The notes beneath the pieces were generated by a model. The model saw only the letters and a program-made list of their open reading frames with translations. It made no database searches and had not been told where the DNA came from. This document shows, one piece after another, positions 587-51,216 of a stretch of 64,000 bases of DNA. Position numbers and translations under genes: made by a program. The DNA lies in the IMG/VR virus record IMGVR_UViG_3300027985_000918, positions 338,384 through 402,383 of that record; one strand, 5' to 3'. Every line of letters starts with the position of its first letter. Positions within the stretch are counted from its first letter, which is position 1.

Positions 587-622
587 CAAAAAAGCCTCCC
601 CAGCCATGAGGCCGGGGAGGCT
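587..622 (-). terminator. Rho-independent terminator after major capsid gene
   Basis: 9-bp perfect stem AGCCTCCCC/GGGGAGGCT (593-601 and 614-622) with further pairing, followed by a T6 tract on the minus strand. Confidence 0.85.
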
Positions 623-665
623 CCTTGCAGGCCCCCTTTTCAGGGAACCTTAGTCAGGCCGCCGA

Positions 666-1538
666 TCAGCGGGTGACGGTCAGGCGGGCCAGGCCACGGG
701 GGTTGTAGGCCCCGATGCCGAGGTTCTCAAACACAGAGAACCCGATGGTGCGGGCCTTGGGGTCGTCCGCCGAGAGGACGGTCAGCTCGGTACGGACCGG
801 AATGCGACCGAAGTGCTCGGCTTCGCAGCACAGGTACACGGTCCCGACCGGAACGAGGCGGCTGACGACGATCTGGGCGCCGTAGATGACACCCATGAGA
901 CCCGTCTTCAGCAGGACCGCCTGGGTTTCGATGTCCAGAATGTCCCGACCGAACTTACGGATGTCGGCATAGTCACGGGCATTCATGTACACCCGGGCCA
1001 CACGGAGGTCCCAGCGTTCGATCAGGGCAAAGGCATCGGCCAGCACCGCACCGGAGATCGGAGCGATGACGGGGATGTCCGGGTTAAGCTGACCCGGCAG
1101 GCTGTCGAACCCGGCGGTGGCGATGGAGTCCATGATGGCGAAGACACGCTCGTCCTCGGCAGCCTGGACCTGCGCCCGAGCCAGATCCTGAGCACGCTCG
1201 ATGAGATCGAAACGGCGCTCCTTGATCTGGGTGAGCGGGATCTCCGGGTTCGAGGCGATCTCGAACAGGGGGAAGATCACACGCCTGGGCTTCGTGATCG
1301 CCAGGATGTTCTGACCCTCTTCCCCTAGGACAAAGGCGGTGACATCCGGGTCCTTGTCGTAGATGGGGAGGGCCCCATCCGGAAGCTGTTCCACAAGGAA
1401 CGTCTTGCGCCCGACGGCAGCGTAGTCACGCCGGGTGCGGAGGGGCGACGTCATGCTGGCGGCCAACTTCGCCCGTCCCATCGGGGTCTGGATCAGCTCG
1501 CCAATCAGACGCTGCTTAACTGCGTTGGTGATGGCCAT
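666..1538 (-). CDS. Major capsid protein (probable HK97 fold, 290 aa)
   Basis: Last gene of the head operon, followed by a strong terminator. The sequence pattern (GRAKLAASM..PLR..RDY..VGRKTFLVEQLPDGALPIYDKD; FEIASNPEI; GFSVFENLGIGAYNPRG) resembles phage capsid proteins, recognised from memory. Confidence 0.8.
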   Translation of the reverse strand: MAITNAVKQRLIGELIQTPMGRAKLAASMTSPLRTRRDYAAVGRKTFLVEQLPDGALPIYDKDPDVTAFVLGEEGQNILAITKPRRVIFPLFEIASNPEIPLTQIKERRFDLIERAQDLARAQVQAAEDERVFAIMDSIATAGFDSLPGQLNPDIPVIAPISGAVLADAFALIERWDLRVARVYMNARDYADIRKFGRDILDIETQAVLLKTGLMGVIYGAQIVVSRLVPVGTVYLCCEAEHFGRIPVRTELTVLSADDPKARTIGFSVFENLGIGAYNPRGLARLTVTR

Positions 1539-2376: not shown

Positions 2377-2415
2377 AGAAAAAAGAAGGCCCGGCCGAGA
2401 AACGGCCGGGCCTTC
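2377..2415 (-). terminator. Rho-independent terminator after scaffold-like gene
   Basis: 13-bp perfect stem GAAGGCCCGGCCG/CGGCCGGGCCTTC (2385-2397 and 2403-2415), 5-nt loop, T-tract on the minus strand. Confidence 0.9.
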
Positions 2416-4010: not shown

Positions 4011-5561
4011 TCAGTGCTGTCCCCGGAGGGCCTGGCCCCTCCGAGACATGATGTTGCCGAGCCGCAGGAACACCCTGGCCTCAGCGGTACTGGGCTTGCG
4101 CCCAAGGGCGGAGGCACAAGCCCCCAGGTAATCACGACCCGTACTGTACCCACTGGGGGCTCCCGCCCTCAGAACGGCCCGGTACAAGTTCCTATCGATC
4201 TCGATGCCAGCAGCCTTGTCCAGCGTTGCCACCCCCTCAATGAGAGCGATGTCCGAGCTGGCCGTCCTGGCCAATACCCGGATAGCAGCTTCGTGCTGGA
4301 CGGTATCGTTGGGTGCCGTGGAGTCGTTGACCGCACGGGATGTGTCTTCCTCCCGCATCTGGTCCTTGATCTTCCGCTTCACCCGATCCTGCATGTACTG
4401 GGTGAGCTCTTCCTCGGTCTCCTGGAGGGGAGACCCAGACTGAGCCGGGGCAACAGCGCCACCCTCACCTTCGTCCTCACCCACCTCGTCGCCCTCATCC
4501 TCCCATCCGGCAATGAAACTGTCTCTCCCCACCGCAAGAACATCCGAGTCCGTCAGAGGACCAGATGTGACCCTTCCCACCACACGAGCGTCCTGGTGGA
4601 AACGATCCTCCAAGATGCTAATGTCCGTGGCGGAACGCCCCATTGTGGCAGCACGCTGCATCTGGTTGGCATCCCACTCCGGGGGCGGGGAGTTGAGAAC
4701 CTTGGCAGCCCTGTCGAGCATAACCTGGGTAGGTTCCAACACGTTCCGCAGGACTGCTCCCGTGAACGCTGGAGTTTCCACCCAACTTGCCTCGATGAAC
4801 CGCACACCGCCAGTGGGATCGATGCTATCGTGCCCACACAACTCCGCCACACGGTGCTGGCGGCCCAACTCGTCATAGAACACGGTGCCCTTGGCATACT
4901 TGATATGGGCACACATCTCAGTTTCGTCGGCAGCCCAGTGTCCACACTTGGTACAAATCGTGCCATCCACCGTACAGCCCATGGACATAGTGCCCATCTT
5001 TCCGGACTCAATGGCCTTAACCAGCTCAGTGTGCTTGCGGTCCGTGGCAACGAGGATGTCAATGTAAATGCTATCCCCGATATCACGGGCCACGGCGTCG
5101 ATGATCCGACCCCGGGACTGTGATTCGATCTGAACGTGCTCAACGAAGTTGTGCCCGCCCACAAACGTCTCGAACGCCTTGAGCAAAACCGGGCGGCTCC
5201 AGGCATCGAGGTTGTTGTTGATGAACTTGTCGCAGACCGGCTTTACCCGGTAATCCCCATACCTGCGGTTCACTCGGAACCCATCCTCCATCTGGTGGCC
5301 GAGCTTAACCCCCTGGGGGGACTCGACATCGACCGACGCCACAATGGTGGCATGGGTCAGGAGGAAATTCTTGGGGTTGAACGGCTTACCCAAGAGTTGA
5401 GTGGCCCGTTCCACCAGGTTGCTGGCCATGGCGACCTTGGTGGGCCTGAAATCCTTGGCGATCTTCCCGCTCTGCCTTGCAGCAGCTCGGACATTGCCCC
5501 ACTGCTTCCGCCCAATTGACGGATTGGCGATTGTGGCATAGGCGTACTTCATCATCGGCAT
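4011..5561 (-). CDS. Prohead (maturation) protease with Cys/His-rich insertion (516 aa)
   Basis: NNNLDAW..L..FETF.G.HNFVEH, GRIIDA, SMGC..CTKCG..CAH, FIEASWVETPAFTGA: layout of HK97/herpes-like prohead proteases; head-module position. Confidence 0.7.
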   Translation of the reverse strand: MPMMKYAYATIANPSIGRKQWGNVRAAARQSGKIAKDFRPTKVAMASNLVERATQLLGKPFNPKNFLLTHATIVASVDVESPQGVKLGHQMEDGFRVNRRYGDYRVKPVCDKFINNNLDAWSRPVLLKAFETFVGGHNFVEHVQIESQSRGRIIDAVARDIGDSIYIDILVATDRKHTELVKAIESGKMGTMSMGCTVDGTICTKCGHWAADETEMCAHIKYAKGTVFYDELGRQHRVAELCGHDSIDPTGGVRFIEASWVETPAFTGAVLRNVLEPTQVMLDRAAKVLNSPPPEWDANQMQRAATMGRSATDISILEDRFHQDARVVGRVTSGPLTDSDVLAVGRDSFIAGWEDEGDEVGEDEGEGGAVAPAQSGSPLQETEEELTQYMQDRVKRKIKDQMREEDTSRAVNDSTAPNDTVQHEAAIRVLARTASSDIALIEGVATLDKAAGIEIDRNLYRAVLRAGAPSGYSTGRDYLGACASALGRKPSTAEARVFLRLGNIMSRRGQALRGQH

Positions 5562-6979: not shown

Positions 6980-9900
6980 TCAACTGGGTAGTTCCTTGTC
7001 CTCTGTTACGGCCCTCATATACGCCCGGAACGCATCCGGTCTCATCTCCCGGATGCGCTTCCTCTCCTTGGGGTCGGTGACGTTTTTGAGCCATTCCTGC
7101 TTCTTCTGTTCCGGGGTCTTCTCAGGATTCTGCTTGTCTTCCCGGACCTTCCGACCGTCATCCTTCGGCTCGACCTTCTGATCGAGAACCGAGAGGTCTC
7201 CAGTCTCACTCACATGGCGGACCCGAGCTACGTTCGGATTCATCTTGTCGGGCACCGTTCCCGACAGCTTCTCTGCGGTAGACATCGTCAAACGCAGATC
7301 CTGAACCTGGACTCCCTCCCCTGCCTTTAGGCAGCTCTCCAGATCCTCCTGGGTCACAGCCTTGGCGATGCAGTGTGCCAGCTCATCGGCGGCCCCCTTG
7401 AGGGCCTTGTCGTCTGTCTTGGCCTGGCGTACCCTTTCGGCCAGACTCTCAGGGTCTGTGGTAGGCTTAGAAGTGGGCTTGGTTTTACCCTTCCCCTTCT
7501 CATCGGTCTCCTTCCCCTTGTGGAAAGCGTTCAGGAACCCTTGGGTTACAGTCATGTCGTTTAGGGCCAGCATCTTGAGCACATCTCGGGCGAACGCTCT
7601 CCCCTCTGCCGTGATGTGGTTGTCCTCATCATCATCCGTAAGAACCCTACCGATGGCCTCATAGGGGCTATTATCCCCTGCCACAGTTTCCACCAATTCA
7701 TCGTCCGACATGATGTCCAGAGCATCCCTGACCTTGACCCTCCCCTCAGGGCTGTACAAATCAGAAGCCCCCTTCAACAGTACGTCTTCGTCCCCAAGGA
7801 CAGCCAGAGACTGAGCCATCCTCTGGAAGCTCTTAGACATCTCCTCCGTGCCGGAGAGCTGGCGACCTTGTACAGCAGCGGCCAACATCATCCCCGACTT
7901 GATAGCATCCAGCTCGATGTACTCGTCTGATTCGGGGTCGGCCTTATCCAATTCCTGCTTGAGCTGGTCGGCAGCAGCATCCAGAAGCCCCGGCCCCGCC
8001 TTACGGAACTGGTGGTAAGCCTCAAGAGACCGCCCATGCAGCTCCTCCGCCGTTTTGTTGTTGTTGTTGACCGCCCGGCCACCAACAAGACGAGGGTTAG
8101 CCACCACCTTCGTGGCGAACACATACTCAGCCAGGCGCTTCGCTCGCACCTGGGGGGCAGCCTCCGCCAACCCCTTGGTCCCCCTCTTGAGAGCAGACTG
8201 AGCCCTCTTCAAGACATCCACAGTCAACCCCCCATCCTCCGCACGAGCGCTCAGAAGCTGTCCCATGTGAGAAGCATAAGCCTCTGCCAGCTCCTGCTTA
8301 GCGGAGGCCACATTCTTCTCGTACTCTGCCTTAAGCCTCTGGATATGATCCCGAACCCCCTGAGCACTCTCCTGATCTTCCGGAACCTCTGGGTACTCCG
8401 GCTCTTCCGGCCACAAATCACCCAGGTCCATTCCCTGGACGGCCTTGTCGAAATCAGCAAGCTGTCTCTGCTGCTTGGCCCTCTGCTGTTCCCGTTCCTT
8501 AACCTTTCGCTCTTCCGCTTGCTGGGCAGCGACCTCTGGATCTTCTTCCTCCTCACCTTCCCCGCCCCCTTCAGCCCTCCTCTTAGCGGATTCTTCATCG
8601 GGAGCCGACGTGGGCTGCTTGGACTTGGGAGGCCAAACACCCCAGCCGTTCTCCGTCTGCCAGTAGTCTCCCTCTTTGTGTTCAGCATCCTGTGGGACCT
8701 TCCCAGCAATGCGAATAGGAGGACCTGACAAGACCATCAACATCCGGTCACCGGCATCCGTGATAGCGGCAACCTTCTTGTAGTTCAGGGAGAGATCGGG
8801 ATCCTTCTCAGCCTTCCCCGTGTCGTCCACGTCCGGGTCATACTCGTCCATCCGATTGCGACGAAGGTCCTGCCGGGGAGGCTTCTTCGATGGCTTCGGA
8901 CGATTCATCCGCTCTACTTCCTCGTTCTCCTTCTCCCCCTCATCTTTGGTCGCCTGCCGGTACAGGTAAGCCGAAGCCACTCTCCCGGCTGCCTTCCTGA
9001 TCCACTCTGCAGCCAGGCGGAGGGACGTACTTGCCCCCTTGCCCAGCCGGACCGGATCTTCGTCAGAGCCCTTCTTGTCAAGACGTTTCATGACCTCGCC
9101 GGAGGCGAGGTACTTGTCGGCCAAACCGGGGACCAGGTACTGGCTCTTAAGGGTCGAGGGTTCATGGCCCACCGCCTTGGCGGTCTCTTTTAGAGCCTGC
9201 TCAAATTCCTTCTTGAGCAGCTTCCCCCGCTCCTTCTTATCCTCGGGCAGCTCCCCACCCTTGGAGCGGATATCCTTGAGACGGCTCTGCATCTCGGCAT
9301 TGGCGTGGTACCCCCGCATGTCCTTAGCGGTGATGCCGAAAGGCTCCAGGTACTCGTTCACGTCTTCGGCAGAGATATCCCCCGTTAGGCTGTCATTCTC
9401 CCCCTTTCCCTCTTTGGCGGCCTTGAGAGCCGACACCAAAGCCGGATCACTGACAACCTTCTCGTGACTCACGCCGGACTTGCCGACGTACTTGACGGTG
9501 ACTTTGTTGCCGGAAAAGGTCAGATGCTTGACCTTCCAACCTGTGACCCCATAGTGCCCATCCTCAGCAGACTCCTCATTGCCGACCCGCTCGTATGTCT
9601 CGTCCATGAGGCCAACAATCAGGGCCTTTAGCCGGGTGTCCTCGTCCTTGGACTTCAAATCCTTCGACACCTGCGCCCTCAGCTTGGTGATGGATCCACG
9701 TAGCTTCTCTACCTGCTTAGCCTTCTCTCGGTTCCGGAGTTCAATCTGGCCCTCGCTGTACTCGTAGACGGTCGTGGTCCCTTTGCCATCGGCCTTGGGG
9801 ACCTCCTTCTTCTTCTGATACTTGGCGGACACCCGAAGAACGGCCTCCTTAGAAAGCCCCCCCGCTGTTGCGGCGGCCTCATCGTAGCGGAGCTTGAACA

Positions 9901-12100
9901 GTTTGATCTCCATGTCCTGCTTGCGCCCCTTGGGCACTGGCTCCACGATCACCACAGGTTCCCCAGACTTCTCGTCAGTCTTGAACTCTTTGATAACCCC
10001 CTTCTTATTCTTGTACTTGCCGTACAAGACGGGGTCACCGACATTCAGGGTGAAGGTTTTGGCGATCCGCAGAGCTGCCTCCTTCATCCACTCGTTATCC
10101 TCCGGGGGGTACAGCTCCTGGAGGTGTGGCATCTCATCCTGGAGGCCCGTGTAGACCCCCTTGAGCAAAGTCTTCTTCGCCTGGGTGTTCAGGGCCCTAT
10201 GGACCCTGTTCCATGTGGTGGAATTCTCCAGGGCACGGTCCAGGAGGGACATCGAGGCTCCCGCCCAGAGGTTTCCGGCCCCCCCCTGCTCATGGACGTA
10301 ATCAATCACTTCGTCCACGATCTGCTGCATGAACGCCCGGATCTCAGTCGCTTCGTTGTGGTAGGTGTCCTCGTCAAGGTGACTGATTCCCCCTGGGGCA
10401 AGAAGGTCCCGGAGGTGGGTGATTTCATGAATCAGAACCGAGTACACCTCCTTGGCGACCCGGGCCTCATTGTCCAGAAACGCCTTGGGGGACTTGGCAG
10501 CATCGAGAGTGACCGTCATCTGGTACTTGAACGCATGGCTCCCCTGAACCCTCTGCGTAACTGCCCCCCCTACCACATACTGCCGGGGACCGCTGAAACC
10601 CAAGGCCTTGTTTCTGGACTCAACCTTGACATCCACAGCCACAAGGGCGCCCTTCACATCCTGGACGACGTACTTAGCGACGACAAAACCCCATGTGTCC
10701 GGCCGGAACCCCCGCTGGGAGTACAGAGAGTCAGAAGGGTCATCTCGAAACCGTAGGTGCTGGGGCAGCACCTGCATGATCTTGTCCGTCAGCCCCTTGG
10801 CCTCGACCTTGTTGATCGGAATAGGACGAGCAGCCCTCTTCTTGGTGTACGCCTGTGCCACTCGGAACACTGCCCCAGCGGTACGCTGCCAGCTTTCTGA
10901 GGTCATCCCCATCCGCTTAGCCGGCACCTGTCCTTTGCCCACCGTCCCCTGTCCCCGGGCAAGCCTCATAAGGGGCTTGCCATACAAACCGGACATGCTC
11001 AGCGCCCTCTGCATCCTGAACTTGCCCACATCGGACAGCTTCTCGGGGGCCGACATGAAGGCAACGAAAGACTCTGCAAAGTCCTCCCTCTCGTTGGTCT
11101 TGGCGTACTCAGTGGGCACATGTAGGGCTTCGATAGCCTGGGCCACCGCAGAGTCACCCTGGGCATACTCTGCCACCTGCTCTTCGGTGAGAACAGGGTG
11201 GTGGTAGCTAGAGTACGAGTCCAGCACTCCCATCTTGTCCTGCTTCTGGCGCCATGCCCGGGAAAGAACCTGGTCGAACCTCTCAGTCCCAGGAGTCACC
11301 CCCTGGTTCTCCTCGACGTGCTTCTGGAACCAGGACCGCAGAGCCTTATTCCGGCTGAGCCGCTTAGCGATCTGCTTCAGATGGTAGACGTTAGCATTCC
11401 CCATCCAGAAGGTCAGATCTTCTATGAGCCCCCGAAAATCCTGCTGGGCCTCGGAGCCCATCTCCAGAAAGGGGTCGGAGCTGCTGTACTTCTCCATGCC
11501 TGCACGGAGCTTGTGAACCTGAGGCATCCCCCAGACCTCAATCTCGTCGAAGGACCAGGAACCAGTCGGGATCGGACCCTCCCACTCAGTGTCGAGACCG
11601 TCGAGGTATTCAAGGGTGGTGTGGGGGCGGTAAACCGTCCAGCTATCCGTTACCTCGACCCCAATGTCCTGGATAGCCGACTTGAGACGGTCCCGAAGCT
11701 CTGCCATGCGGTGACTGAATCGAATGGGGAGAATAGCAACCCGCCGCTGCTGGGATTCATGGGTGAAGTAGTCCAACCCCTCCAGTTTGGCCTGTACGGG
11801 CCCCCTCAGTTCTTCGGACACCACCCGCTGGCAGGTCTCGATGAACTCGTCCTCATGACCCTTGACGTTGCCAACGTAGAGCAGAGTGACGTGGGGCGGA
11901 CTCTTGTCGTTACCCGACTTTTTCACCGGAAACTGGCTGGAAATCCCCCGGGGTAGAGGAATGAACAGCCCTGTCCACTCCGTGCTGTCGCCGGTCTTTT
12001 TGCCGTCATCGGGACCGGCGTGCCTTTTAGCCCAATCAGCCTTGACCTGCTGCCGGACGGCCAATCTGCGAGCCTGTGCTTGAAGAATAGGGTGCTCCAC
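6980..12100 (-). CDS. 1706-aa multidomain protein: 2H phosphoesterase, zincin-like, KOW/SH3, DNA topoisomerase IB, helical C-terminus
   Basis: HVT and HTT motifs (about 11890 and 11620); YAKTNEREDFAESF; HEITH at 10416-10430 with downstream NEATEIRA; VGDPVLYGKYKNKKG; TopIB residues in YERVGN, VGKSG, KDMRGY, VGH and SQY. Confidence 0.8.
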   Translation of the reverse strand: MEHPILQAQARRLAVRQQVKADWAKRHAGPDDGKKTGDSTEWTGLFIPLPRGISSQFPVKKSGNDKSPPHVTLLYVGNVKGHEDEFIETCQRVVSEELRGPVQAKLEGLDYFTHESQQRRVAILPIRFSHRMAELRDRLKSAIQDIGVEVTDSWTVYRPHTTLEYLDGLDTEWEGPIPTGSWSFDEIEVWGMPQVHKLRAGMEKYSSSDPFLEMGSEAQQDFRGLIEDLTFWMGNANVYHLKQIAKRLSRNKALRSWFQKHVEENQGVTPGTERFDQVLSRAWRQKQDKMGVLDSYSSYHHPVLTEEQVAEYAQGDSAVAQAIEALHVPTEYAKTNEREDFAESFVAFMSAPEKLSDVGKFRMQRALSMSGLYGKPLMRLARGQGTVGKGQVPAKRMGMTSESWQRTAGAVFRVAQAYTKKRAARPIPINKVEAKGLTDKIMQVLPQHLRFRDDPSDSLYSQRGFRPDTWGFVVAKYVVQDVKGALVAVDVKVESRNKALGFSGPRQYVVGGAVTQRVQGSHAFKYQMTVTLDAAKSPKAFLDNEARVAKEVYSVLIHEITHLRDLLAPGGISHLDEDTYHNEATEIRAFMQQIVDEVIDYVHEQGGAGNLWAGASMSLLDRALENSTTWNRVHRALNTQAKKTLLKGVYTGLQDEMPHLQELYPPEDNEWMKEAALRIAKTFTLNVGDPVLYGKYKNKKGVIKEFKTDEKSGEPVVIVEPVPKGRKQDMEIKLFKLRYDEAAATAGGLSKEAVLRVSAKYQKKKEVPKADGKGTTTVYEYSEGQIELRNREKAKQVEKLRGSITKLRAQVSKDLKSKDEDTRLKALIVGLMDETYERVGNEESAEDGHYGVTGWKVKHLTFSGNKVTVKYVGKSGVSHEKVVSDPALVSALKAAKEGKGENDSLTGDISAEDVNEYLEPFGITAKDMRGYHANAEMQSRLKDIRSKGGELPEDKKERGKLLKKEFEQALKETAKAVGHEPSTLKSQYLVPGLADKYLASGEVMKRLDKKGSDEDPVRLGKGASTSLRLAAEWIRKAAGRVASAYLYRQATKDEGEKENEEVERMNRPKPSKKPPRQDLRRNRMDEYDPDVDDTGKAEKDPDLSLNYKKVAAITDAGDRMLMVLSGPPIRIAGKVPQDAEHKEGDYWQTENGWGVWPPKSKQPTSAPDEESAKRRAEGGGEGEEEEDPEVAAQQAEERKVKEREQQRAKQQRQLADFDKAVQGMDLGDLWPEEPEYPEVPEDQESAQGVRDHIQRLKAEYEKNVASAKQELAEAYASHMGQLLSARAEDGGLTVDVLKRAQSALKRGTKGLAEAAPQVRAKRLAEYVFATKVVANPRLVGGRAVNNNNKTAEELHGRSLEAYHQFRKAGPGLLDAAADQLKQELDKADPESDEYIELDAIKSGMMLAAAVQGRQLSGTEEMSKSFQRMAQSLAVLGDEDVLLKGASDLYSPEGRVKVRDALDIMSDDELVETVAGDNSPYEAIGRVLTDDDEDNHITAEGRAFARDVLKMLALNDMTVTQGFLNAFHKGKETDEKGKGKTKPTSKPTTDPESLAERVRQAKTDDKALKGAADELAHCIAKAVTQEDLESCLKAGEGVQVQDLRLTMSTAEKLSGTVPDKMNPNVARVRHVSETGDLSVLDQKVEPKDDGRKVREDKQNPEKTPEQKKQEWLKNVTDPKERKRIREMRPDAFRAYMRAVTEDKELPS

Positions 12101-12144: not shown

Positions 12145-14052
12145 TCACAGCGCCGGTGATGGCCTGTGCCCCTTGAAGCGGGCCTCCTTCCCGGACACTG
12201 GCTTAGTCAGGCCACTCTCCAGCTCACCCTGAAGCTCGGGATCAATGTGGGTGTCGCTCGCCAGAGCTTCCTCAGCGGCCTCTCGGATAGCTCTCTTGAT
12301 GGCTTCCTGGAAAGTATCCTTGAGGAAACGGTGAATCTCGTTCTGCTGTACTGAGCCAAACCGGGACATGCCCTCTTCCTTCGGTTTGGTATACTTCAGA
12401 CCCAGGACATCGGCCACTCGCTGGACAGCGTCGGAGGACTCCGCCAAGGCGTCCCCGACACGGCTGTAGACCGCCCGCAAGACTTCATTGAACGTAGCGT
12501 CCTGGAGTGTAAAAGTGTCCCTCTCCAGCTTCTCTCGGACGGTGTCGGCATCAAGGTTCAGCAAATCCAGAATGGTCTCGATGTCCAAACTCCCCTTCTG
12601 GTAGAGATTGAACAATGTGTCGAATGTCTCCTGGTTATCCCGCAAAGCCAAACGGGTGAACGACAGCCTCGGATGGATGACCACCTCTTCGCCGTCTTCG
12701 TCGTACTCGATGAACCCCATGCGGCGGCACATCGGCTCCAAAAGTTGCCGGTCTACGAAATCCTGAAGCAGCTCACGCAGCAACAGATAGCGGACGTTGA
12801 TCACCTCCAAGTGGATGCGGTCCCCACTGTAGCTCGACTCACCGGACAGCAAAGATTCAGTGACCCCGAGACCGGCATAAAGCTGCCGGTCAGTGAGGTC
12901 GTACTCGGAGGACAGGTCCAGCAAGCGGGAGTCCGCCCCCCCGCCCCGCTCTTCCCAGTTGACCTGGAAGTTCGTGATGACACTATAGTCCGGGTCCTGA
13001 AGAGCCAGATCCACCTGGTCCCGCAGCTCTTCCGTCTGCTCGGCGTTCATGTCCTCCGCCCAGATGATGCGGTAGGGGGTCATGTGCCGGGAGGCGATGG
13101 ATGTCTGGGCCTGGCGGAGTTTATCCCGGAACACCAGGACTCGGAGACACCGCTGAAGGATAGACTTCCCCCGAGCCTCGTACTGACTCTTCTTGCGGGC
13201 CAGGTAGTGGCAGAAGCTGCCCGCCTCAGGGGTGGTGTTCAAGGGGATGTTCTCACCCCGGAGGACGTAGTCCACAACCTCGGTAGGCATGGACTCGACC
13301 ACCTCTCGGGCTCGGAGATCTCCCTGAGTAGCCCTCTCGATGATGGCCTTGGTCTTGCTATCGGGAATCAGCTCAATGAGGCGCTTGTCCGTGAAGGGGA
13401 ACGCCTCCATCTGAATCTGCTCGGGGGGAAGAACTCGGAGAGCCGACCAGCCCTTGTAATTCTTCTTCACCCACTGGACCATCCTCTTTCGGGCATCCGG
13501 GTAAGGCCGCTCTTCCTCTACCAGGGACCCGTCAGCAGCAATCTCACGATATGTCTCATGAGTCACCTCCCGGGGCATATCTGGACTCGTGTCCTCTGCG
13601 AACACGAATACCTCCCCGACGAGGTAATATTCGTGGACCACCTCCAAAAGACGGTGCAGCAGACCAATATAGCGAACCCACCGCTCACAGAACCTCATGG
13701 ACGCCTCAGCCAGCTTCTTGTTCTTGGCCTTAGGCTTGCGGAGGCGTAGCTTGGAAAGGGGGAGTTCCCCGTGCAGATCGATGGCCTGACCCACAAAGGG
13801 GTCGTTGTCGTAAAAGAAGCGGAAATAGTTCCGCATCTCATCTACGGACTGAGGCAGCTCCAGGAAATCTGGGCTCAGCTCGGGACTGTAGAAGTTGCCC
13901 CCCGAGCCAACCATGGCCCCACCCGTAGCAGGGTAGGCCATCTTGAGGCGGGCTGTTCCGGTAACGAGCTTGCCGGGTTTGCCTACCTTGACCTTGTCCC
14001 GCTCGGGAAGGGTAGCCACCTTGACTGTATGCTTGGGATCGTTCTTCTTCAT
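12145..14052 (-). CDS. Portal protein (635 aa)
   Basis: Downstream of terminase; FYDNDPFVGQAIDL, YEARGKSILQRC..RDKLRQAQ pattern; size typical of large-phage portals. Confidence 0.75.
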   Translation of the reverse strand: MKKNDPKHTVKVATLPERDKVKVGKPGKLVTGTARLKMAYPATGGAMVGSGGNFYSPELSPDFLELPQSVDEMRNYFRFFYDNDPFVGQAIDLHGELPLSKLRLRKPKAKNKKLAEASMRFCERWVRYIGLLHRLLEVVHEYYLVGEVFVFAEDTSPDMPREVTHETYREIAADGSLVEEERPYPDARKRMVQWVKKNYKGWSALRVLPPEQIQMEAFPFTDKRLIELIPDSKTKAIIERATQGDLRAREVVESMPTEVVDYVLRGENIPLNTTPEAGSFCHYLARKKSQYEARGKSILQRCLRVLVFRDKLRQAQTSIASRHMTPYRIIWAEDMNAEQTEELRDQVDLALQDPDYSVITNFQVNWEERGGGADSRLLDLSSEYDLTDRQLYAGLGVTESLLSGESSYSGDRIHLEVINVRYLLLRELLQDFVDRQLLEPMCRRMGFIEYDEDGEEVVIHPRLSFTRLALRDNQETFDTLFNLYQKGSLDIETILDLLNLDADTVREKLERDTFTLQDATFNEVLRAVYSRVGDALAESSDAVQRVADVLGLKYTKPKEEGMSRFGSVQQNEIHRFLKDTFQEAIKRAIREAAEEALASDTHIDPELQGELESGLTKPVSGKEARFKGHRPSPAL

Positions 14053-14675: not shown

Positions 14676-16673
14676 TCACCTTCCTCGGATACTTCCCCGG
14701 TTGGACCGGGAGGGTTGGCGATCCGGGCTCGATCCGCCCCCCTGCATGGCACGGATGCGAGCCTTGCGGGCCTGCTTAGCGGTCAAAGCCCTCTGGGGGA
14801 GCATCCCCGGCGGCAAGTTGTTGTTCCGGCCAGCAATGTGCTTGGGCTTGATGATGTGCTGGCTGGCACACCAGACCATGCGAACAAGTGCATCCGACAT
14901 GTCGTCGTGCTTACCTTTGATGTTTGGAGCCTCCACAGTCACCAGATACTTGGTTTGGTACTCTGCCTGGAGTTCCAGCAGCTCTTCGATGTACGGGCAA
15001 TGCTCAGCGGCTTCGGGGTCCCCCGTCTTTGACGGCTTGGGCCAGTCGTACAACCTCAGCCTCTTGTCCCACATGAAGTCCTTGAAGTTACGGAACATCT
15101 GGGAGCTGAGCTGCTTGGTGAAATGCTCAGACTGGAGCATCTTCAAACCCCGGTTATGGAGGGCCTGCTCAAACACGATCCCCGCCCACTGATCGAAAAT
15201 CCCCTCTGCGAACATGAACCGCTTGGAAAAGCCGGTAACCCAGTCGGCCACATCGTCGAACTCCAGCCTCTCCAAATGGGCGTACTCACCCTCCCCAGCC
15301 CGAATCTGTTCAACGACATCCAGCTCGATCGTACCGTCGTCCCCCAGATGCCCGATGGCAATGGCGCTGCCATCCCCCGCAAGAGCGAAGTCGAGACCAA
15401 TGTAATGGGGCTGGCGAGACCGCCCCCGGAGCTTCGGGCGAAGCTCAGTGTCCACACAGGCCAGGAGGTCGTCCTCGTCCTCAATCCACCCCCGGGTGCG
15501 ATCCGTGAAGTGCCCACCGTATTCGGTGAAAAACACAACGGGGTCGGCCCGGTATGCCTGCTCCAACTCATCCCCATCCACGAAAGGGTTGACCTCCCAA
15601 GTTGGAGCCTGGATGGCGATCATGTTGGGGGCGCCACTCATAGCAAGTTGGAATTGCTTGTAGAACTCCCCCTGCCTTCCCAGAGGAGAGCTGATCCCGA
15701 TCATGCGGCCTTCGACCGGACCGCCCGCAGCGGGAGAAAAAGCAGACATGGACGGTTTTACAGCGTTCCACACCTCGGTGGCCGAGGACTGGCCCGCATC
15801 CGTAAAGTGGGCCATCTCATCAAGGATAATCACAATGTTACCGGCACCCCGGAGACCTTTGGCTCGGCAGGGACGGAACGTCACACGGATGGTAGCATTG
15901 GCCTTTTCATCATCCACATACCGGCCATACCTCTCGATGTCCTTCGGGGTCTGGAACCTGGCATAGGACATGGTATTGTTGGCGGTATACGGGGCAAAGA
16001 AAGCACAGTCTTTGTAATACCCTGCCACCTTGCTATAAAGGATGCCAGCCTGTTCCTTATCGGTCGCTACCGAAATTAGCTGGATGGGTTCACCTGCGGG
16101 CAGTCCATAGTATTCCTGGGGATCGCCTTTGGAAATCAGCTTATATGTCTCGTAAGCACCGATGATTGAAGCCAACTGGGTTTTGCCCGAACGACGGCCC
16201 ACCGACAAGATCATGACCCGCAGCTCCGTTCCCGGAGCCGTCCTTACACTGCATTGTCCCTTCTCAAACAGGTAATTTAGGTACTCAACCTCCGACATGA
16301 ACTTCCACTTGCGGCGCTTCCAGTCAGAGACCATCACCACGTTCTCGTACAGACCCCCCCAATCATCCTGGCTCATGACGTGAGGGAACGTGTTCGCCAG
16401 ACTGAGGGCCTGCCTCGGGCGACGGTTCTTGAGGGTGATCTCATCGTACTGGGGGTGACTCCGGGGAACGGGCTTGGAAAGATCCAGACCGTAGGGGTTG
16501 TCGTCCAGGGGCATCCCATAGTGCAACTTGAGGATGATCCTCTGCACTGGGTACAGCTCCATCCCCAGACCCCATCGGGACTCAGCAAACGTGAGGATGT
16601 CTGCTACAGAGGTAGACCCGGTGCCCTTCTGGGCGGCACCAATGTCAAGGGCTAGGCTGGCGAGATTCGGCAT
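14676..16673 (-). CDS. terL: Terminase large subunit (665 aa)
   Basis: Walker A VGRRSGKT, Walker B IVIILDEMAH, coupling motif ISSP, RNase H-like nuclease YIGLDFA / FDQW / HDDMSDA. Confidence 0.9.
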   Translation of the reverse strand: MPNLASLALDIGAAQKGTGSTSVADILTFAESRWGLGMELYPVQRIILKLHYGMPLDDNPYGLDLSKPVPRSHPQYDEITLKNRRPRQALSLANTFPHVMSQDDWGGLYENVVMVSDWKRRKWKFMSEVEYLNYLFEKGQCSVRTAPGTELRVMILSVGRRSGKTQLASIIGAYETYKLISKGDPQEYYGLPAGEPIQLISVATDKEQAGILYSKVAGYYKDCAFFAPYTANNTMSYARFQTPKDIERYGRYVDDEKANATIRVTFRPCRAKGLRGAGNIVIILDEMAHFTDAGQSSATEVWNAVKPSMSAFSPAAGGPVEGRMIGISSPLGRQGEFYKQFQLAMSGAPNMIAIQAPTWEVNPFVDGDELEQAYRADPVVFFTEYGGHFTDRTRGWIEDEDDLLACVDTELRPKLRGRSRQPHYIGLDFALAGDGSAIAIGHLGDDGTIELDVVEQIRAGEGEYAHLERLEFDDVADWVTGFSKRFMFAEGIFDQWAGIVFEQALHNRGLKMLQSEHFTKQLSSQMFRNFKDFMWDKRLRLYDWPKPSKTGDPEAAEHCPYIEELLELQAEYQTKYLVTVEAPNIKGKHDDMSDALVRMVWCASQHIIKPKHIAGRNNNLPPGMLPQRALTAKQARKARIRAMQGGGSSPDRQPSRSNRGSIRGR

Positions 16674-26892: not shown

Positions 26893-27438
26893 CTATGCCG
26901 GGGCGGGCTCCAGTTGCTCCAGGAAGATTCGAGGGATGGAGGCAATACGTCGCCAGGACCTCAGCTCAAACTCAATGTACGCATTGTCTCCGTCGAGACC
27001 GATGACTTTCCCACTCATACTGCGGAACTTCCCCTCCATGACCGTCACCACCGAACCGATCTCCACCTCTGCGGCGATCATCTGTTGGAGCTGACGTCGT
27101 AGGGATTCGATTTCCGAATCGGGGAGGACGGAGAGGGTTCTCATACGGTGAGGGCCGGATGTGGTAGACATCACGGAGGAGACATAGGGACGTCTCTCCA
27201 GGGCAAAGTACGTGGCCTCAGGGAGCCCCGAGGCCACGAACACATAGCCCTCCATCAAGTGGATGGTGATGACCTTGGACTGCTTCCGGTAGATAGCCGT
27301 GGGGATGAAGATGGGGAAGTCCGCATCGACGCCGAGGTCCATCCTCAAACAGGTACTGAGGATTCCTTCCTCAACCTTCTGCTCACCAAGCCGACTCAGC
27401 TCAATGGCGATCCAAGTTGTCCCATCCCGTGTGTCCAC
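26893..27438 (-). CDS. nusG: NusG-family transcription elongation/antitermination factor
   Basis: NGN domain (IFIPT..LMEGYVFV) plus KOW (IGSVVTVMEGKFRSMSGKV..IEFEL). Confidence 0.8.
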   Translation of the reverse strand: MDTRDGTTWIAIELSRLGEQKVEEGILSTCLRMDLGVDADFPIFIPTAIYRKQSKVITIHLMEGYVFVASGLPEATYFALERRPYVSSVMSTTSGPHRMRTLSVLPDSEIESLRRQLQQMIAAEVEIGSVVTVMEGKFRSMSGKVIGLDGDNAYIEFELRSWRRIASIPRIFLEQLEPAPA

Positions 27439-28873
27439 CTGCGGCTACCCCGTCAAGTTCGACGATTCGCAGTGCAAGAAGCCGGGCGAACAGCATTGCA
27501 TCAAAGGACGAAAGTTTCCCCGATGGCGAAGTTTGGCCTTGGGTTCCCTTGCTCTTCTTTGCGACAGCACGGTAGTCTACGTGAACTCCGTTCCCGGTCA
27601 ACTCCGAAAGTTTACCGGGCCGTTCAGAACTTTTAGCAGATTTGTGGTGAGTTTGGGAAGTTTCTTCTTCCCGCACAGGAGCCGGGGCTTGGGCTGAAGG
27701 CTGCGGAACCCCAGTAATCATGGCCTGGGGGATTCCCACGGGAACCTGCTGGACGATCACCGTAGGAACCCCAGAACCAACCACCCCGTGATGCAATGAA
27801 GCCAGATCGCACTTGAGCATCGCCCCCGAAGGTCTCCCGGGTCGGGAAGCCAGTCGGCTGGCATACCCCATGAGGACCTCGCCCCTCTTCGCCACCTCAG
27901 CGATCTTCTCAGGCTTCCAGTACACCACCGGACGGGGACCTCCCAGGTACACCTGATAGGCCAGCATGCTGGCCTCGGCCAGACGCTGGTAGATGGTGGA
28001 AGGGCTGACCCTCTCCAGCAGAAGGTCTACCGCTTGGTAGGCCATCGAGAGCCCCCAGTTGGGAGAGGGTTCCCCCTGGGGGTTCACCTTGATCCCCAGA
28101 GAGTTGATGACCGTCAGATACAACCCAATCTGGTCCAAGCGGAGGTACTGGCTGACGTTATCCTCGTTGATGACCCCCAGCATCGAGACCCCCTCGACAG
28201 CCTTGAGGGCATCTCGGATGTGGCACTCGGTGACAGTGGCGATAGTCGTGAGGGCGTCAAAATCTGCCTCGATCCCCTCCTGCTCGCAGATCTCCTGGAG
28301 ACGCCTGGAGATCACATCGGGGGTCAGAGCCTCTATGACAAAGGCCGGGGCGCACCGGGACAGCACCGTGTCCCGCATCTTCTCCGGCTCAGTGGTGCAG
28401 AAGATGCAAACAAGCTGTTTGTCGTCGCTCCCCGAGACCTTGTCCTCCAACGGCTTCAGGAGGGCATCCAGAGCCTCCTTGCTGAGCTGGTGGGCCTCAT
28501 CAAACAGGTACACCCTTCTCTTGCCCGAGAAAGTATCGTACTTGATCTCTTCCTTCAGCCGGTTGATGTCGTCCTTGCCGCTGTTCGTAGCGGCGTCGAC
28601 CTCGGAGAAGCAGTCCGAAGAGCCATTATCCAGGATGGACCGGCAGGAGGGGCACTCGTTGCAGGGCCCCCCTTCCTGAGGGTTGTCACACAGCAGAGCC
28701 CGAGCCAGGATACGCCCCAAGGTGGTCTTCCCGGAGCCGAAACCCCCAGCAAAAAGGTACGACTGCTGGAACCCCCTACCAGACGCCACGAAGCGGCGGA
28801 GGATGGTCTTGGTCGCCTCTTGACCCAGAACTTCGTCATAGGATGTGGGGCGGTATTTGAGGTCGAGGCTCAC
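27401..28873 (-). CDS. dnaX: DNA polymerase III gamma/tau clamp-loader ATPase
   Basis: LKYRP..EVLGQE, Walker A GSGKTT, Zn module C..PCNECPSC, EVDAA, LFDEAHQL, TTE, SRC, IRDAL. Confidence 0.92.
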   Translation of the reverse strand: MSLDLKYRPTSYDEVLGQEATKTILRRFVASGRGFQQSYLFAGGFGSGKTTLGRILARALLCDNPQEGGPCNECPSCRSILDNGSSDCFSEVDAATNSGKDDINRLKEEIKYDTFSGKRRVYLFDEAHQLSKEALDALLKPLEDKVSGSDDKQLVCIFCTTEPEKMRDTVLSRCAPAFVIEALTPDVISRRLQEICEQEGIEADFDALTTIATVTECHIRDALKAVEGVSMLGVINEDNVSQYLRLDQIGLYLTVINSLGIKVNPQGEPSPNWGLSMAYQAVDLLLERVSPSTIYQRLAEASMLAYQVYLGGPRPVVYWKPEKIAEVAKRGEVLMGYASRLASRPGRPSGAMLKCDLASLHHGVVGSGVPTVIVQQVPVGIPQAMITGVPQPSAQAPAPVREEETSQTHHKSAKSSERPGKLSELTGNGVHVDYRAVAKKSKGTQGQTSPSGKLSSFDAMLFARLLALRIVELDGVAAGGHTGWDNLDRH

Positions 28874-43345: not shown

Positions 43346-43656
43346 TCCTCCCTGGCGGCCTCCCCAATCATACGGGAGAAGTTGTGCCGGAGGACTTTGA
43401 GGGCGTTCTCCAGCTCGTCATCGTTGATGAGGGACGAAGCCCGTGCCGACCGGAACACAGTCTCGTTGCACTCCAGGAAAGCCAGCATATAGGCCACCCT
43501 AGCCTCCGCTGCCGTAGTATCCTCGTCCATCTCAATGGCAACGGACAGGAAAGTGTCTCCCCCTCGACCAGTGACCTTCCTACTGACGGTGAAGGATTTC
43601 CGGTGCATCTTGCGAAGGGCGGACTTTCCAAGGGCCTTCAAGTCTTCTTTGCTCAT
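43342..43656 (-). CDS. Hypothetical protein (104 aa)
   Basis: ATGA overlaps on both sides. Confidence 0.55.
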   Translation of the reverse strand: MSKEDLKALGKSALRKMHRKSFTVSRKVTGRGGDTFLSVAIEMDEDTTAAEARVAYMLAFLECNETVFRSARASSLINDDELENALKVLRHNFSRMIGEAARED

Positions 43657-46073: not shown

Positions 46074-46611
46074 TGTTACCCCGGGTCTTGATCTTGGCCG
46101 CATCCGCAGCCTGCTTGATGCCTTCCAGTACCCCCCGGAGCTGTTCGGCCTGCTGGCCCAGCACCTCGATCTGAGAGAGGTCAGCGTTGGCAACAGACTC
46201 CCGCATCTTCGCCACGTCCACCACAGGAGCAGCGGCGAGCCGGGCATGATGCCCCTCCAAAAGAGGGAGGGGCAGCTTCTTCAACACTCCATCGAATTGG
46301 CGCACCGACCAGATCCCCTGGTCGGTAACCAGCACCCCCTCCGCCTTGACGGAAAGCATCCGGAGGCGGTGCTCCGGGATGTGGTGCTCTACAGGGCAAT
46401 CCCCCCGGCCCTGCCAAAGGCAGCTCCCGTACCCCCACTTGGAATCGTCCAAACCCCCCGGAGGAACGTAATGGAAGGCGATGTTGATGTGCTGTCCCAG
46501 CAATGGACGCAGGAGGTCCACGATGGGGGTGGGTTCCCCCTCAGAACCCTGGATACTGAGGGTTCCGTTGTGCTGTAGGACGATGCCCTCGGCGAGAACG
46601 ATATTGAGCAT
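46066..46611 (-). CDS. Hypothetical protein (181 aa)
   Basis: GAGGTG RBS; small overlap with the recD2 start. Confidence 0.55.
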   Translation of the reverse strand: MLNIVLAEGIVLQHNGTLSIQGSEGEPTPIVDLLRPLLGQHINIAFHYVPPGGLDDSKWGYGSCLWQGRGDCPVEHHIPEHRLRMLSVKAEGVLVTDQGIWSVRQFDGVLKKLPLPLLEGHHARLAAAPVVDVAKMRESVANADLSQIEVLGQQAEQLRGVLEGIKQAADAAKIKTRGNNG

Positions 46612-51148: not shown

Positions 51149-51216
51149 GTTGTCTCCATCTGGCGAACAGTACACCGCCAGGTCAAACGGGTGTCATGTG
51201 GTGACCCTGAGGCAAC

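What the first reader, a model, noticed from the sequence alone, without database searches (positions are those of the whole stretch)
9060..9800. Type IB DNA topoisomerase embedded in a head-module protein
Seen: residues matching the vaccinia/bacterial TopIB catalytic set, R in YERVGN (9587-9589), K in VGKSG, R in KDMRGY, H in VGH and Y in SQY (9137-9139). Established: TopIB relaxes supercoils without ATP and is packaged in poxvirus cores to support early transcription. Inference: a phage analogue delivered with the DNA to relax or help circularise it, or acting during packaging.
Basis: partly seen in the sequence, partly recalled or inferred. Interest (0 to 1): 0.65.

Follow-up and report, generated by a model that had tools for sequence, protein, structure and literature searches.

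The report
Topoisomerase inside a huge-phage head protein
A 402-kb phage encodes its only recognisable DNA-untwisting enzyme, a small poxvirus-like type IB topoisomerase, as one domain of a giant multi-enzyme protein placed right after the portal gene; the arrangement recurs in many huge phages and suggests, without proving, that the enzyme travels in the capsid with the DNA.

Summary
Window 6980-12100 (-) is one 1706-aa ORF. Residues about 759-1010 are a type IB topoisomerase (Pfam PF01028, E 3e-30). Its residues R838, K874, R929, H979 and Y988 align with variola R130, K167, R223, H265 and Y274. The predicted fold matches variola TopIB best. All five residues are invariant in 120 of 120 large relatives.

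The gene lies between the portal gene and the prohead protease-to-capsid block of a 402-kb phage. It has the architecture of a polyvalent protein: a variable N-terminal part (here a 2H phosphoesterase and an HExxH region), then TopIB, a conserved charged motif, and an all-alpha C-terminal module with no known fold.

Of 80 related viral loci:
- 54 have this arrangement.
- 8 have a stand-alone TopIB of about 350 aa between terminase and portal.
- 18 have it among nucleic-acid metabolism genes.

Six genomes of 402-536 kb each carry exactly one TopIB and no recognisable type IA or IIA topoisomerase.

Best reading: an active, ATP-independent swivel that is the clade's core topoisomerase. In this lineage it is probably loaded into the capsid and delivered with the DNA. 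Packaging and injection are inferred, not shown. I found no paper describing this arrangement, so I rate it a new variant of known kinds.

The parts
6980..12100 (-). Whole gene: a 1706-aa polyvalent protein encoded just after the portal gene (P0001)
   Evidence: ORF list and translation. GGAGG lies 8 nt before the GTG start. An identical 1706-aa protein is on record.
11597..11908 (-). N-terminal 2H (LigT-like) phosphoesterase domain, aa 65-168. Both H-x-T motifs are present (H70 at 11891-11893, H160 at 11621-11623).
   Evidence: PF13563 E 9e-11; PF02834, PF10469 and TIGR02258 weaker. Motif positions.
10415..10429 (-). HEITH (HExxH) motif, aa 558-562, inside an uncharacterised region (aa about 200-660). 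It may be a zincin-type metallopeptidase.
   Evidence: The motif is seen directly in the sequence. There is no Pfam or PHROG match. The Atlas leads are at chance level. This is a lead only.
9071..9826 (-). Type IB topoisomerase unit, aa about 759-1010: one beta-hairpin plus the catalytic domain, with R838, K874, R929, H979 and Y988.
   Evidence: PF01028 E 3e-30. PDB alignments. AF2 model with pLDDT above 90 over this span. Foldseek best hit is variola TopIB, E 1e-13. The five catalytic residues are invariant in 120/120.
8771..8953 (-). Conserved charged linear motif, aa 1050-1110 (ATK...KPPRxDL...DxDLSxNYK). It marks the start of the ancestral post-portal protein.
   Evidence: At least 80% identical at many columns across 75 C-terminal tails. 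At least one of the two sub-motifs is present in 96 of 119 fused proteins; both are absent from 118 of 120 stand-alone TopIBs. It forms residues 6-65 of the separate post-portal ORF in phages where TopIB is a separate gene.
6983..8233 (-). C-terminal all-alpha module, aa 1290-1706, shared with relatives at about 28% identity. No known fold.
   Evidence: AF2 mean pLDDT 91.4, pTM 0.79. BFVD best E 0.16. PDB-wide Z at most 7.4, which is within helical noise.
12145..14052 (-). Portal protein gene, immediately upstream
   Evidence: phrog_16240 E 1.4e-25; weak PF06074.
14676..16673 (-). Large terminase subunit gene
   Evidence: phrog_2 E 5.5e-28.
4011..5561 (-). Prohead (head maturation) protease gene, downstream
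   Evidence: phrog_18299 E 5.6e-13; phrog_2774 E 3e-22.
666..1538 (-). Major head protein gene, followed by a strong terminator at 626-589
   Evidence: phrog_2522 E 4.3e-48. Terminator scan.

Best explanation
Residues about 759-1010 of the 1706-aa protein are a catalytically competent, minimal type IB topoisomerase: one beta-hairpin plus the catalytic domain. Such an enzyme nicks one strand through Tyr988, lets the duplex swivel, and reseals it, without ATP or metal. It is the single-copy, sole recognisable topoisomerase of a clade of 400-540 kb phages. In this lineage it is fused, together with changeable effector domains (here a 2H phosphoesterase and an HExxH region), onto the N-terminus of the conserved protein encoded just after the portal gene. 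The most likely consequence is that the polyprotein is made late with the head proteins, is built into the procapsid, and leaves with the genome. The incoming 402-kb DNA would then have its own swivel to relax the positive and negative supercoils created by ejection, early transcription and the start of replication. The effector domains would act on host RNA or nucleotide targets. Shown here: the TopIB identity, intact active-site residues under strong purifying selection, the head-module position, and the fusion boundary. Inferred: packaging into virions, injection, and the time and substrate of action.
For: Identity. PF01028 matches at E 3e-30. The five catalytic residues align to variola R130, K167, R223, H265 and Y274. 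The AF2 model has pLDDT above 90 over this span. Its best fold matches are variola TopIB (E 1e-13, TM 0.62), then D. radiodurans TopIB and human Top1. Tyrosine recombinases score only E 3e-3 or weaker.

Selection. The five residues are invariant in 120/120 relatives. The domain is as conserved as portal (59% against 66% identity; 1.11 bits per residue for both) and more conserved than terminase or protease. The rest of the protein is variable.

Context. The order terminase, portal, this gene, protease, capsid holds in the window and in a 418-kb relative. Of 80 IMG/VR loci, 54 have the large TopIB ORF (median 1665 aa) ending within about 200 bp of the block that leads to the protease gene, and 8 have a stand-alone TopIB between terminase and portal.

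Fusion boundary. In those 8 loci the separate post-portal ORF begins with the same charged motif that follows TopIB here.

Polyvalent character. Relatives combine TopIB with PolyA_pol, RNA ligase, cREC, 2H, NUDIX, GNAT, PAP2, ART-PolyVal, LPD1 and InPase domains in varying order. This matches the class described as head-packaged and co-injected (PMC5512222).

Sole topoisomerase. There is one PF01028 match and no PF00521 or PF01131 match in this genome and in five genomes that are 94-100% complete.

Timing. No strong terminator lies between terminase and the 508-aa ORF. The gene is therefore probably late. An enzyme made late can only act early in the next infection if the virion carries it.

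Precedent. Vaccinia H6R TopIB is listed among the known virion enzymes (PMC1540416).
Against: There are no proteomic, expression or biochemical data for any member, and every member is metagenomic. No MuF/gp7 domain is present (PF04233), and the C-terminal module has no fold relative that would mark it as a virion protein. In 18 of 80 loci the same TopIB lies among RNase T, DHH, HD, GIY-YIG and similar genes. Cultured jumbo phages carry a different, stand-alone TopIB among nucleotide-metabolism genes, so a link to the capsid is not intrinsic to phage TopIBs. A sole topoisomerase is also what a purely replicative enzyme would look like. Only the last hairpin of the poxviral N-terminal clamp domain is recognisable, so DNA binding may need other parts of the protein.
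Confidence: 0.5

Rival explanations
1. Packaging-time swivel. The TopIB acts late, at or near the portal-terminase motor. It releases the twist that builds up while a 400-kb unit is reeled out of a branched, topologically constrained concatemer. It may or may not be injected afterwards.
For: The gene always sits with packaging genes when it is in the head module, including as a stand-alone gene exactly between terminase and portal in 8 loci. Its conservation equals that of portal. The enzyme is ATP-independent, so it could work at or inside a capsid (established TopIB chemistry; my own knowledge). It appears to be restricted to very large genomes: 28 of the 80 contigs exceed 200 kb and they reach 536 kb.
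Against: To my knowledge no phage packaging system is known to need a topoisomerase. 18 of 80 loci are not in the head module. The fusion to effector domains aimed at RNA and nucleotides fits delivery into the host better than motor assistance.
Confidence: 0.2
2. Ordinary intracellular replication and transcription topoisomerase. The domain serves the phage genome in the cytoplasm. The fusion to the post-portal protein is gene-order happenstance, and the protein (or the TopIB part, after cleavage) is not a virion component.
For: It is the single-copy, sole recognisable topoisomerase in six genomes. Stand-alone versions lie among DNA and RNA metabolism genes in 18 of 80 loci. The TopIBs of cultured jumbo phages are annotated and positioned as DNA-metabolism genes.
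Against: The fusion is stable and widespread: 54 of 80 loci, and 292 large protein clusters. Fused and short forms separate into few clades, with 13 parsimony changes among 240 tips. The position inside the terminase-to-capsid gene run would make a replication enzyme appear too late.
Confidence: 0.2
3. Covalent tether or pilot. The 3'-phosphotyrosyl intermediate is used to attach the polyvalent protein covalently to the phage DNA, at a nick or near an end. The DNA would then drag the protein into the cell, or its end would be capped against exonucleases, as a relaxase pilots conjugative DNA.
For: TopIB chemistry forms such an adduct, and poxviral TopIB is trapped on sites close to a duplex end (established; my own knowledge). 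Relaxase-bearing transfer proteins are the conjugative counterpart of phage polyvalent proteins (PMC5512222). Tyr988 is invariant.
Against: There is no evidence of trapped complexes. The stand-alone 250-350 aa forms have nothing to tether. The assembly ends are only a 107-bp overlap, so the physical termini are unknown. The pox residues that read CCCTT (K133, Y136) are not conserved.
Confidence: 0.07
4. Processing of RNA or embedded ribonucleotides. The TopIB domain cleaves at ribonucleotides to give 2',3'-cyclic phosphate ends and works with the RNA-repair-type partner domains.
For: Partner domains in this protein and its relatives handle cyclic-phosphate and RNA ends: 2H, cREC_REC, RNA ligase and PolyA_pol/CCA-type nucleotidyltransferase. 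Site-specific ribonuclease activity of TopIB is documented for the vaccinia and eukaryotic enzymes (my own knowledge).
Against: TopIB is the constant part while the RNA domains come and go. Stand-alone forms are common. The residues conserved are those of a DNA swivel.
Confidence: 0.03

Closest known systems
Poxvirus type IB topoisomerase (vaccinia H6R, variola; PDB 2h7f, 3igc, 1a41)
   Same: Same fold and the same R-K-R-H-Y catalytic residues. It is small and ATP-independent. It is a known virion enzyme (PMC1540416), which is the functional analogy proposed here. The equivalents of Y70, Y72 and R80 in the last N-domain hairpin are kept.
   Different: Only about 21% identical. The first 60 or so residues of the pox N-terminal domain have no confident counterpart. 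The CCCTT-reading residues K133 and Y136 are N and S here. This TopIB is embedded in a 1706-aa multidomain protein instead of being a free 314-aa enzyme. The profile search places it no closer to pox (E 2e-16) than to the bacterial enzyme (E 7e-16) or to entry 6z01 (E 1e-21, partial coverage).
Bacterial TopIB (Deinococcus radiodurans; PDB 2f4q, 3m4a)
   Same: Same family and fold and similar size class.
   Different: About 22% identical. The bacterial enzyme is a stand-alone cellular protein. The phage clade was found in only 4 contigs, all from MAGs, of 185,579 species genomes when scanned with its own motifs.
Phage-specific TopIB of cultured jumbo phages (PaBG gp084, phiRSL1 ORF108, Lu11, Motura, NCTB, Xanthomonas PhiXhv; noted in PMC7824862)
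   Same: A phage-encoded TopIB in genomes above 190 kb.
   Different: A separate clade, about 30% identical over part of the domain. These are stand-alone proteins of 560-670 aa set among nucleotide-metabolism and repair genes. They are not fused into a post-portal polyprotein. TopIB is not among the virion proteins named in the text of the PaBG study (Table 1 itself was not read).
Polyvalent proteins of phages (Iyer et al. 2017, PMC5512222); examples by function: SPP1 gp7 and Mu F fusions, T4 Alt, P1 DarB, N4 virion RNA polymerase
   Same: Many unrelated enzymatic domains in one giant polypeptide. They are encoded next to portal and terminase, their domains are shuffled between relatives, and they share the ART-PolyVal, LPD1, InPase and 2H domains.
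   Different: That paper does not list a topoisomerase or any tyrosine-recombinase-fold domain among its polyvalent-protein domains. No MuF anchor is present here. Instead the constant part is TopIB, a charged motif and a new all-alpha module.

Membership tests
Type IB topoisomerase (Pfam PF01028) | Profile match above the curated threshold | tested here: met
   105.7 bits against a cut-off of 23.7, E 3.1e-30, aa 788-986. Confirmed on the genome at 110.6 bits.
Type IB topoisomerase (Pfam PF01028) | Catalytic Arg-Lys-Arg-His residues plus the nucleophilic Tyr at the aligned positions | tested here: met
   R838, K874, R929, H979 and Y988 align with variola R130, K167, R223, H265 and Y274. They are invariant in 120/120 relatives.
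Type IB topoisomerase (Pfam PF01028) | TopIB catalytic-domain fold, distinct from tyrosine recombinases | tested here: met
   AF2 model with pLDDT above 90. Foldseek gives variola E 1e-13, D. radiodurans E 3e-12 and human Top1 E 7e-11. The best recombinase hit is XerH at E 3e-3.
Type IB topoisomerase (Pfam PF01028) | N-terminal domain that completes the C-shaped clamp around DNA | tested here: inconclusive
   Only the last beta-hairpin aligns (variola residues about 63-80). The 100 residues upstream are modelled at pLDDT below 66. Stand-alone relatives of 247-290 aa show that the minimal unit is the hairpin plus the catalytic domain.
Type IB topoisomerase (Pfam PF01028) | ATP-independent relaxation through a covalent 3'-phosphotyrosyl intermediate | not testable with these tools
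   This needs a plasmid relaxation assay and covalent-complex trapping with a Y988F control.
Poxvirus-type TopIB (CCCTT-specific) | Residues that read the pentamer (K133 and Y136 of the specificity helix) | tested here: not met
   The aligned residues are N and S. That these pox residues confer specificity is from my own knowledge.
Phage polyvalent proteins (PMC5512222) | Two or more domains of unrelated biochemistry in one polypeptide, shuffled among relatives | tested here: met
   2H plus TopIB here. More than 20 different partner families occur in relatives, in variable order.
Phage polyvalent proteins (PMC5512222) | Encoded in the portal-terminase late-gene context | tested here: met
Phage polyvalent proteins (PMC5512222) | Packaged in the virion and injected with the DNA | not testable with these tools
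   This needs virion proteomics and infection assays. No cultured member is known.
MuF / SPP1 gp7 minor head proteins (PF04233) | MuF domain | tested here: not met
   No PF04233 match in the protein (E up to 1) or anywhere in the genome (E up to 1). Only the position after the portal gene is shared.
Tyrosine recombinases / integrases | Integrase-type catalytic domain as the best sequence or fold match | tested here: not met
   No integrase family appears in Pfam at E up to 1. Fold matches are at least 10 orders of magnitude weaker than to TopIB.

The most novel reading that the evidence does not exclude
The TopIB is a working part of the capsid and genome-delivery machine itself. It is held next to the portal by the post-portal protein. 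It acts on the DNA inside or at the mouth of the capsid, either as a swivel during packaging and ejection of a 400-kb genome or as a covalent 3'-phosphotyrosyl tether or end-cap that pilots the polyprotein into the cell. That would be the first topoisomerase known to be an integral component of a phage packaging and ejection apparatus, and a possible solution to the torsional problem of very long genomes.
Probability: 0.2. Interest if true: 0.85.

Novelty: new variant of a known kind. Interest (0 to 1): 0.6.

Why it matters
Phages are not known to carry a topoisomerase in the virion; poxviruses do. If this enzyme is packaged, huge phages have converged on the poxviral solution of bringing their own swivel with a very long genome. 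It would also give the polyvalent, co-injected protein class a DNA-topology function that its original catalogue does not contain.

Even without packaging, the data define a large, tightly conserved, phage-specific TopIB clade. It comprises at least 169 viral contigs and more than 500 protein clusters. It is the only recognisable topoisomerase of 400-540 kb genomes, and its minimal unit of about 250 aa is smaller than the 314-aa variola enzyme (2h7f). That makes it an attractive minimal enzyme for biochemistry.

The fusion boundary mapped here, and the conserved motif that follows TopIB, give concrete constructs for testing how cargo is recruited into these capsids.

Tried and rejected
1. Tyrosine recombinase or integrase instead of TopIB: rejected.

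2. MuF/gp7 homology of the post-portal protein: no PF04233 match in the protein or the genome.

3. Naming the C-terminal module by fold: BFVD best E 0.16, and PDB-wide Z at most 7.4 on helical bundles, so nothing usable. The Atlas feature search gave no hit. The word-based protein search of this region found only 3 close relatives, so it was too insensitive to ask whether the module occurs without TopIB. A local BLAST answered that question instead.

4. Naming aa 200-660: nothing in Pfam, PHROGs or NCBIfam. The Atlas leads (0.82-0.85, zincin/ATLF-like) are at chance level. Only the HExxH motif stands.

5. Complex prediction of portal with the charged motif (aa 1040-1125): no verdict, score 0.00, controls not run. 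This is evidence neither for nor against binding.

6. Special kinship to poxvirus TopIB: the single-sequence search and Foldseek rank variola first, but the profile search puts pox, bacterial and 6z01 chains at comparable distance. No claim is made. A tree including pox sequences was not built because no tool supplied those sequences.

7. Physical genome ends, to test the end-tether idea: the record's direct terminal repeat is only a 107-bp assembly overlap. CCCTT is not unusual in a way that can be interpreted (1153 occurrences against a median pentamer count of 710 at 60% GC).

8. Literature: no paper describing TopIB in phage head modules or polyvalent proteins turned up in eight full-text searches.

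9. Virion proteomics of cultured phages: the text of the PaBG study (14 proteins identified) names other gene products and not gp084; Table 1 was not read.

10. Not used: the large representative protein search (not needed), and the read-laying tools.
Full report
SOURCE AND OBSERVATION. The window is the last 64 kb (338384-402383) of a 402,383-bp IMG/VR virus record (IMGVR_UViG_3300028422_000919). The record's ends overlap by 107 bp, which indicates a circular assembly and not mapped termini. The finding lies in a single 1706-aa ORF on the minus strand, 6980-12100. It starts at GTG with a GGAGG 8 nt upstream. Pfam PF01028 (Topoisom_I) matches aa 788-986 at E 3.1e-30. In the HMMER alignment to variola TopIB, residues R838, K874, R929, H979 and Y988 fall on R130, K167, R223, H265 and Y274.

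STRUCTURE. An AlphaFold2 model of aa 660-1015, built with 52 relatives, is confident (pLDDT above 90) from about aa 759 to 1009. Foldseek ranks variola TopIB first (E 1e-13, TM 0.62 on the target). D. radiodurans TopIB and human Top1 follow. Tyrosine recombinases appear only at E 3e-3 or weaker. A profile of the phage clade scores pox, bacterial and 6z01 chains at comparable levels, so I claim no special kinship to poxviruses.

Only the last beta-hairpin of the poxviral N-terminal domain is recognisable, and the equivalents of Y70, Y72 and R80 are kept. The preceding 100 or so residues are modelled poorly. By eye they contain a KOW/SH3-like stretch, and about 40% of relatives share them. The pox residues K133 and Y136 are N and S here, so CCCTT specificity should not be assumed.

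SELECTION AND SPREAD. A word-indexed search anchored on the domain found 292 large proteins (940-2970 aa) carrying it at 55-79% identity. The same search found 225 short ones (247-473 aa) at 52-64% identity. At least 169 IMG/VR contigs encode it, many of them 200-536 kb long. Only 4 contigs, all from MAGs, turned up in 185,579 species genomes. This is a phage-specific clade. It is distinct from the TopIB of about 560-670 aa in cultured jumbo phages such as PaBG, phiRSL1, Lu11, Motura, NCTB and PhiXhv, which is about 30% identical and sits among nucleotide-metabolism genes (noted in PMC7824862).

The five catalytic residues are invariant in 120/120 aligned large relatives. In 15 loci that contain all the markers, the domain is as conserved as portal (59% against 66% identity; 1.11 bits per residue each). 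It is more conserved than terminase (52%) or protease (50%). This pattern fits a core enzyme better than an arms-race effector.

ANATOMY OF THE PROTEIN. BLAST coverage against 119 relatives shows a variable N-terminal half and a constant second half.
- The 2H phosphoesterase, aa 65-168, has both HxT motifs and is shared by about 21 relatives.
- Residues 200-660, which hold an HEITH motif, are shared by only a few relatives.
- The TopIB unit is the constant centre of the protein.
- A strongly conserved charged linear motif lies at aa 1050-1110.
- After a low-complexity acidic linker comes an all-alpha module, aa 1290-1706. It folds confidently (pLDDT 91) but has no relative in BFVD or the PDB.

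Relatives replace the N-terminal part with other domains, in changing order: PolyA_pol/CCA-type nucleotidyltransferase (about 39 of 120), DUF5661, cREC_REC, RNA ligase, NUDIX, PAP2, GNAT, HAD, ParB, inteins, and the polyvalent-protein domains ART-PolyVal, LPD1 and InPase. This is the architecture of the polyvalent proteins of Iyer et al. 2017, which those authors infer to be head-packaged and co-injected (PMC5512222). That paper mentions no topoisomerase or recombinase-fold domain. No MuF domain exists in this protein or genome.

CONTEXT. In the window the minus-strand order is as follows:
- large terminase (14676-16673)
- a 160-aa ORF
- portal (12145-14052)
- this gene
- 223-aa and 211-aa ORFs
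- prohead protease (4011-5561)
- 508-aa and 231-aa ORFs
- major head protein (666-1538)

Strong terminators occur only after the 508-aa ORF and after the capsid gene. The same order holds in a 418-kb relative. The 80 IMG/VR loci fall into three groups:
- 54 loci carry TopIB in a large ORF. In 53 of them (median ORF 1665 aa, up to 2837) the ORF ends within about 200 bp of the block leading to the protease gene. In one truncated locus only the upstream portal is visible.
- 8 loci have a stand-alone TopIB of 346-393 aa exactly between terminase and portal.
- 18 loci show no recognisable head gene within 10 kb. Where I examined these, TopIB sits among RNase T, DHH, HD, GIY-YIG, RNase HII and methyltransferase genes.

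In the 8 terminase-TopIB-portal loci the separate post-portal ORF (875-1210 aa in the full-length cases) begins at residues 6-65 with the same charged motif that follows TopIB in the window protein, at 43-59% identity. The window protein is therefore a fusion of effectors plus TopIB onto the N-terminus of an ancestral post-portal protein. On a FastTree tree of 240 domains rooted with PhiXhv and PaBG TopIB, fused and short forms change state only 13 times.

SOLE TOPOISOMERASE. This genome and five relatives of 437-536 kb (94-100% complete by CheckV) each have exactly one PF01028 match. None has a PF00521 (GyrA/ParC) or PF01131 (type IA) match. There are caveats. Only these two profiles were tried, divergent enzymes could be missed, and CheckV rates this genome as 76% complete despite the terminal overlap. 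PF00562 (RNA polymerase beta) is also absent from this genome.

INTERPRETATION. Several points are shown: an intact TopIB under strong purifying selection, a single copy, no other recognisable topoisomerase in the genome, and a stable fusion into the post-portal polyprotein of the head module. From this I infer the following (confidence about 0.5). The polyprotein is made late with the head proteins, is incorporated into the procapsid, and is delivered with the DNA. The incoming 402-kb genome then has an ATP-independent swivel for the supercoils generated by ejection, early transcription and the start of replication. The N-terminal domains act on host RNA or nucleotide targets.

The timing argument is that an enzyme encoded inside the terminase-to-capsid gene run can only serve the early phase if the particle carries it. 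The precedent is the virion TopIB of vaccinia. That its loss lowers early transcription is my own recollection of the literature.

There are four rivals:
- a swivel that acts during packaging at the motor (0.2)
- a purely cytoplasmic replicative enzyme whose fusion is incidental (0.2), supported by the 18 non-head loci and by its being the only topoisomerase
- a covalent tether or end-cap that uses the phosphotyrosyl adduct (0.07)
- a ribonucleotide- or RNA-directed role alongside the RNA-repair-type partner domains (0.03)

The window encodes a RecA.

NOVELTY. Both components are known kinds: TopIB and polyvalent head-module proteins. A TopIB as the constant core of such proteins, and as the only recognisable topoisomerase of a large clade of huge phages, was not found in the polyvalent-protein paper, in the jumbo-phage survey and review, or in eight full-text searches. 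Automatic JGI annotations do label some members as DNA topoisomerase IB. I rate it a new variant of a known kind, with interest 0.6.

LIMITS. All members are metagenomic, and no expression, proteomic or biochemical data exist. The complex prediction of portal with the charged motif gave no verdict and counts neither way. The large representative search and the read tools were not used.

Noticed in passing
window 11597-11908 (-), aa 65-168 of the same protein: The N-terminal 2H (LigT-like) phosphoesterase has both H-x-T motifs intact (H70, H160). It probably acts on 2',3'-cyclic phosphate RNA ends or on 2'-5' or cyclic nucleotide signals, as proposed for 2H domains of polyvalent proteins.
   Followed up: partly
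relatives P0003-P0121; P0011 and P0045: The partner domains fused to this TopIB are dominated by an RNA-end toolkit: PolyA_pol/CCA-type nucleotidyltransferase in about 39 of 120, plus RNA ligase, cREC_REC, 2H and tRNA_lig_CPD. This looks like a deliverable tRNA or RNA repair kit, possibly against host anticodon nucleases.
   Followed up: partly
window 8771-8953 (-), aa 1050-1110: A highly conserved charged linear motif (ATK...KPPRxDL...DxDLSxNYK). It is internal here but forms the extreme N-terminus of the separate post-portal protein in phages with a stand-alone TopIB. It is a candidate capsid-targeting or protease-processing signal. Its partner is unknown.
   Followed up: partly
window 6983-8233 (-), aa 1290-1706: A confidently predicted all-alpha module (pLDDT 91) with no detectable relative in BFVD or the PDB.
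   Followed up: yes
window 10415-10429 (-), aa 558-562, within aa about 200-660: An HEITH (HExxH) motif in a region with no family match. It may be a zincin-type peptidase, which polyvalent proteins often carry for self-processing. The only other support is chance-level Atlas leads.
   Followed up: partly
P0122-P0241: Stand-alone members of this TopIB clade are as short as 247-290 aa, shorter than the 314-aa variola enzyme (2h7f). Some of the shortest come from short contigs and may be truncated.
   Followed up: no
window 46670-51175 (-): A 1501-aa B12-dependent (class II) ribonucleotide reductase interrupted by an intein with a LAGLIDADG homing endonuclease.
   Followed up: no
window 58656-63728 (-): A 1690-aa SNF2-related helicase that also carries an intein with a LAGLIDADG domain. 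Inteins also interrupt several TopIB polyproteins in relatives (PF14528 and PF14890).
   Followed up: no
window 27401-28873, 39380-40702 and 43653-46247 (all -): Clamp-loader subunit, RecA and RecD2-type helicase genes lie upstream of the head module on the same strand. Most long ORFs of the window run on the minus strand.
   Followed up: no
whole genome G000, and G001-G005: There is no PF00562 (RNA polymerase beta) match in this 402-kb genome. No type IA or IIA topoisomerase profile matches in six genomes of 402-536 kb.
   Followed up: partly
window 2385-2415 and 589-626 (-): Two strong intrinsic terminators (13 and 17 bp stems) follow the 508-aa ORF and the major head protein gene. None of comparable strength lies between terminase and the 508-aa ORF.
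   Followed up: no
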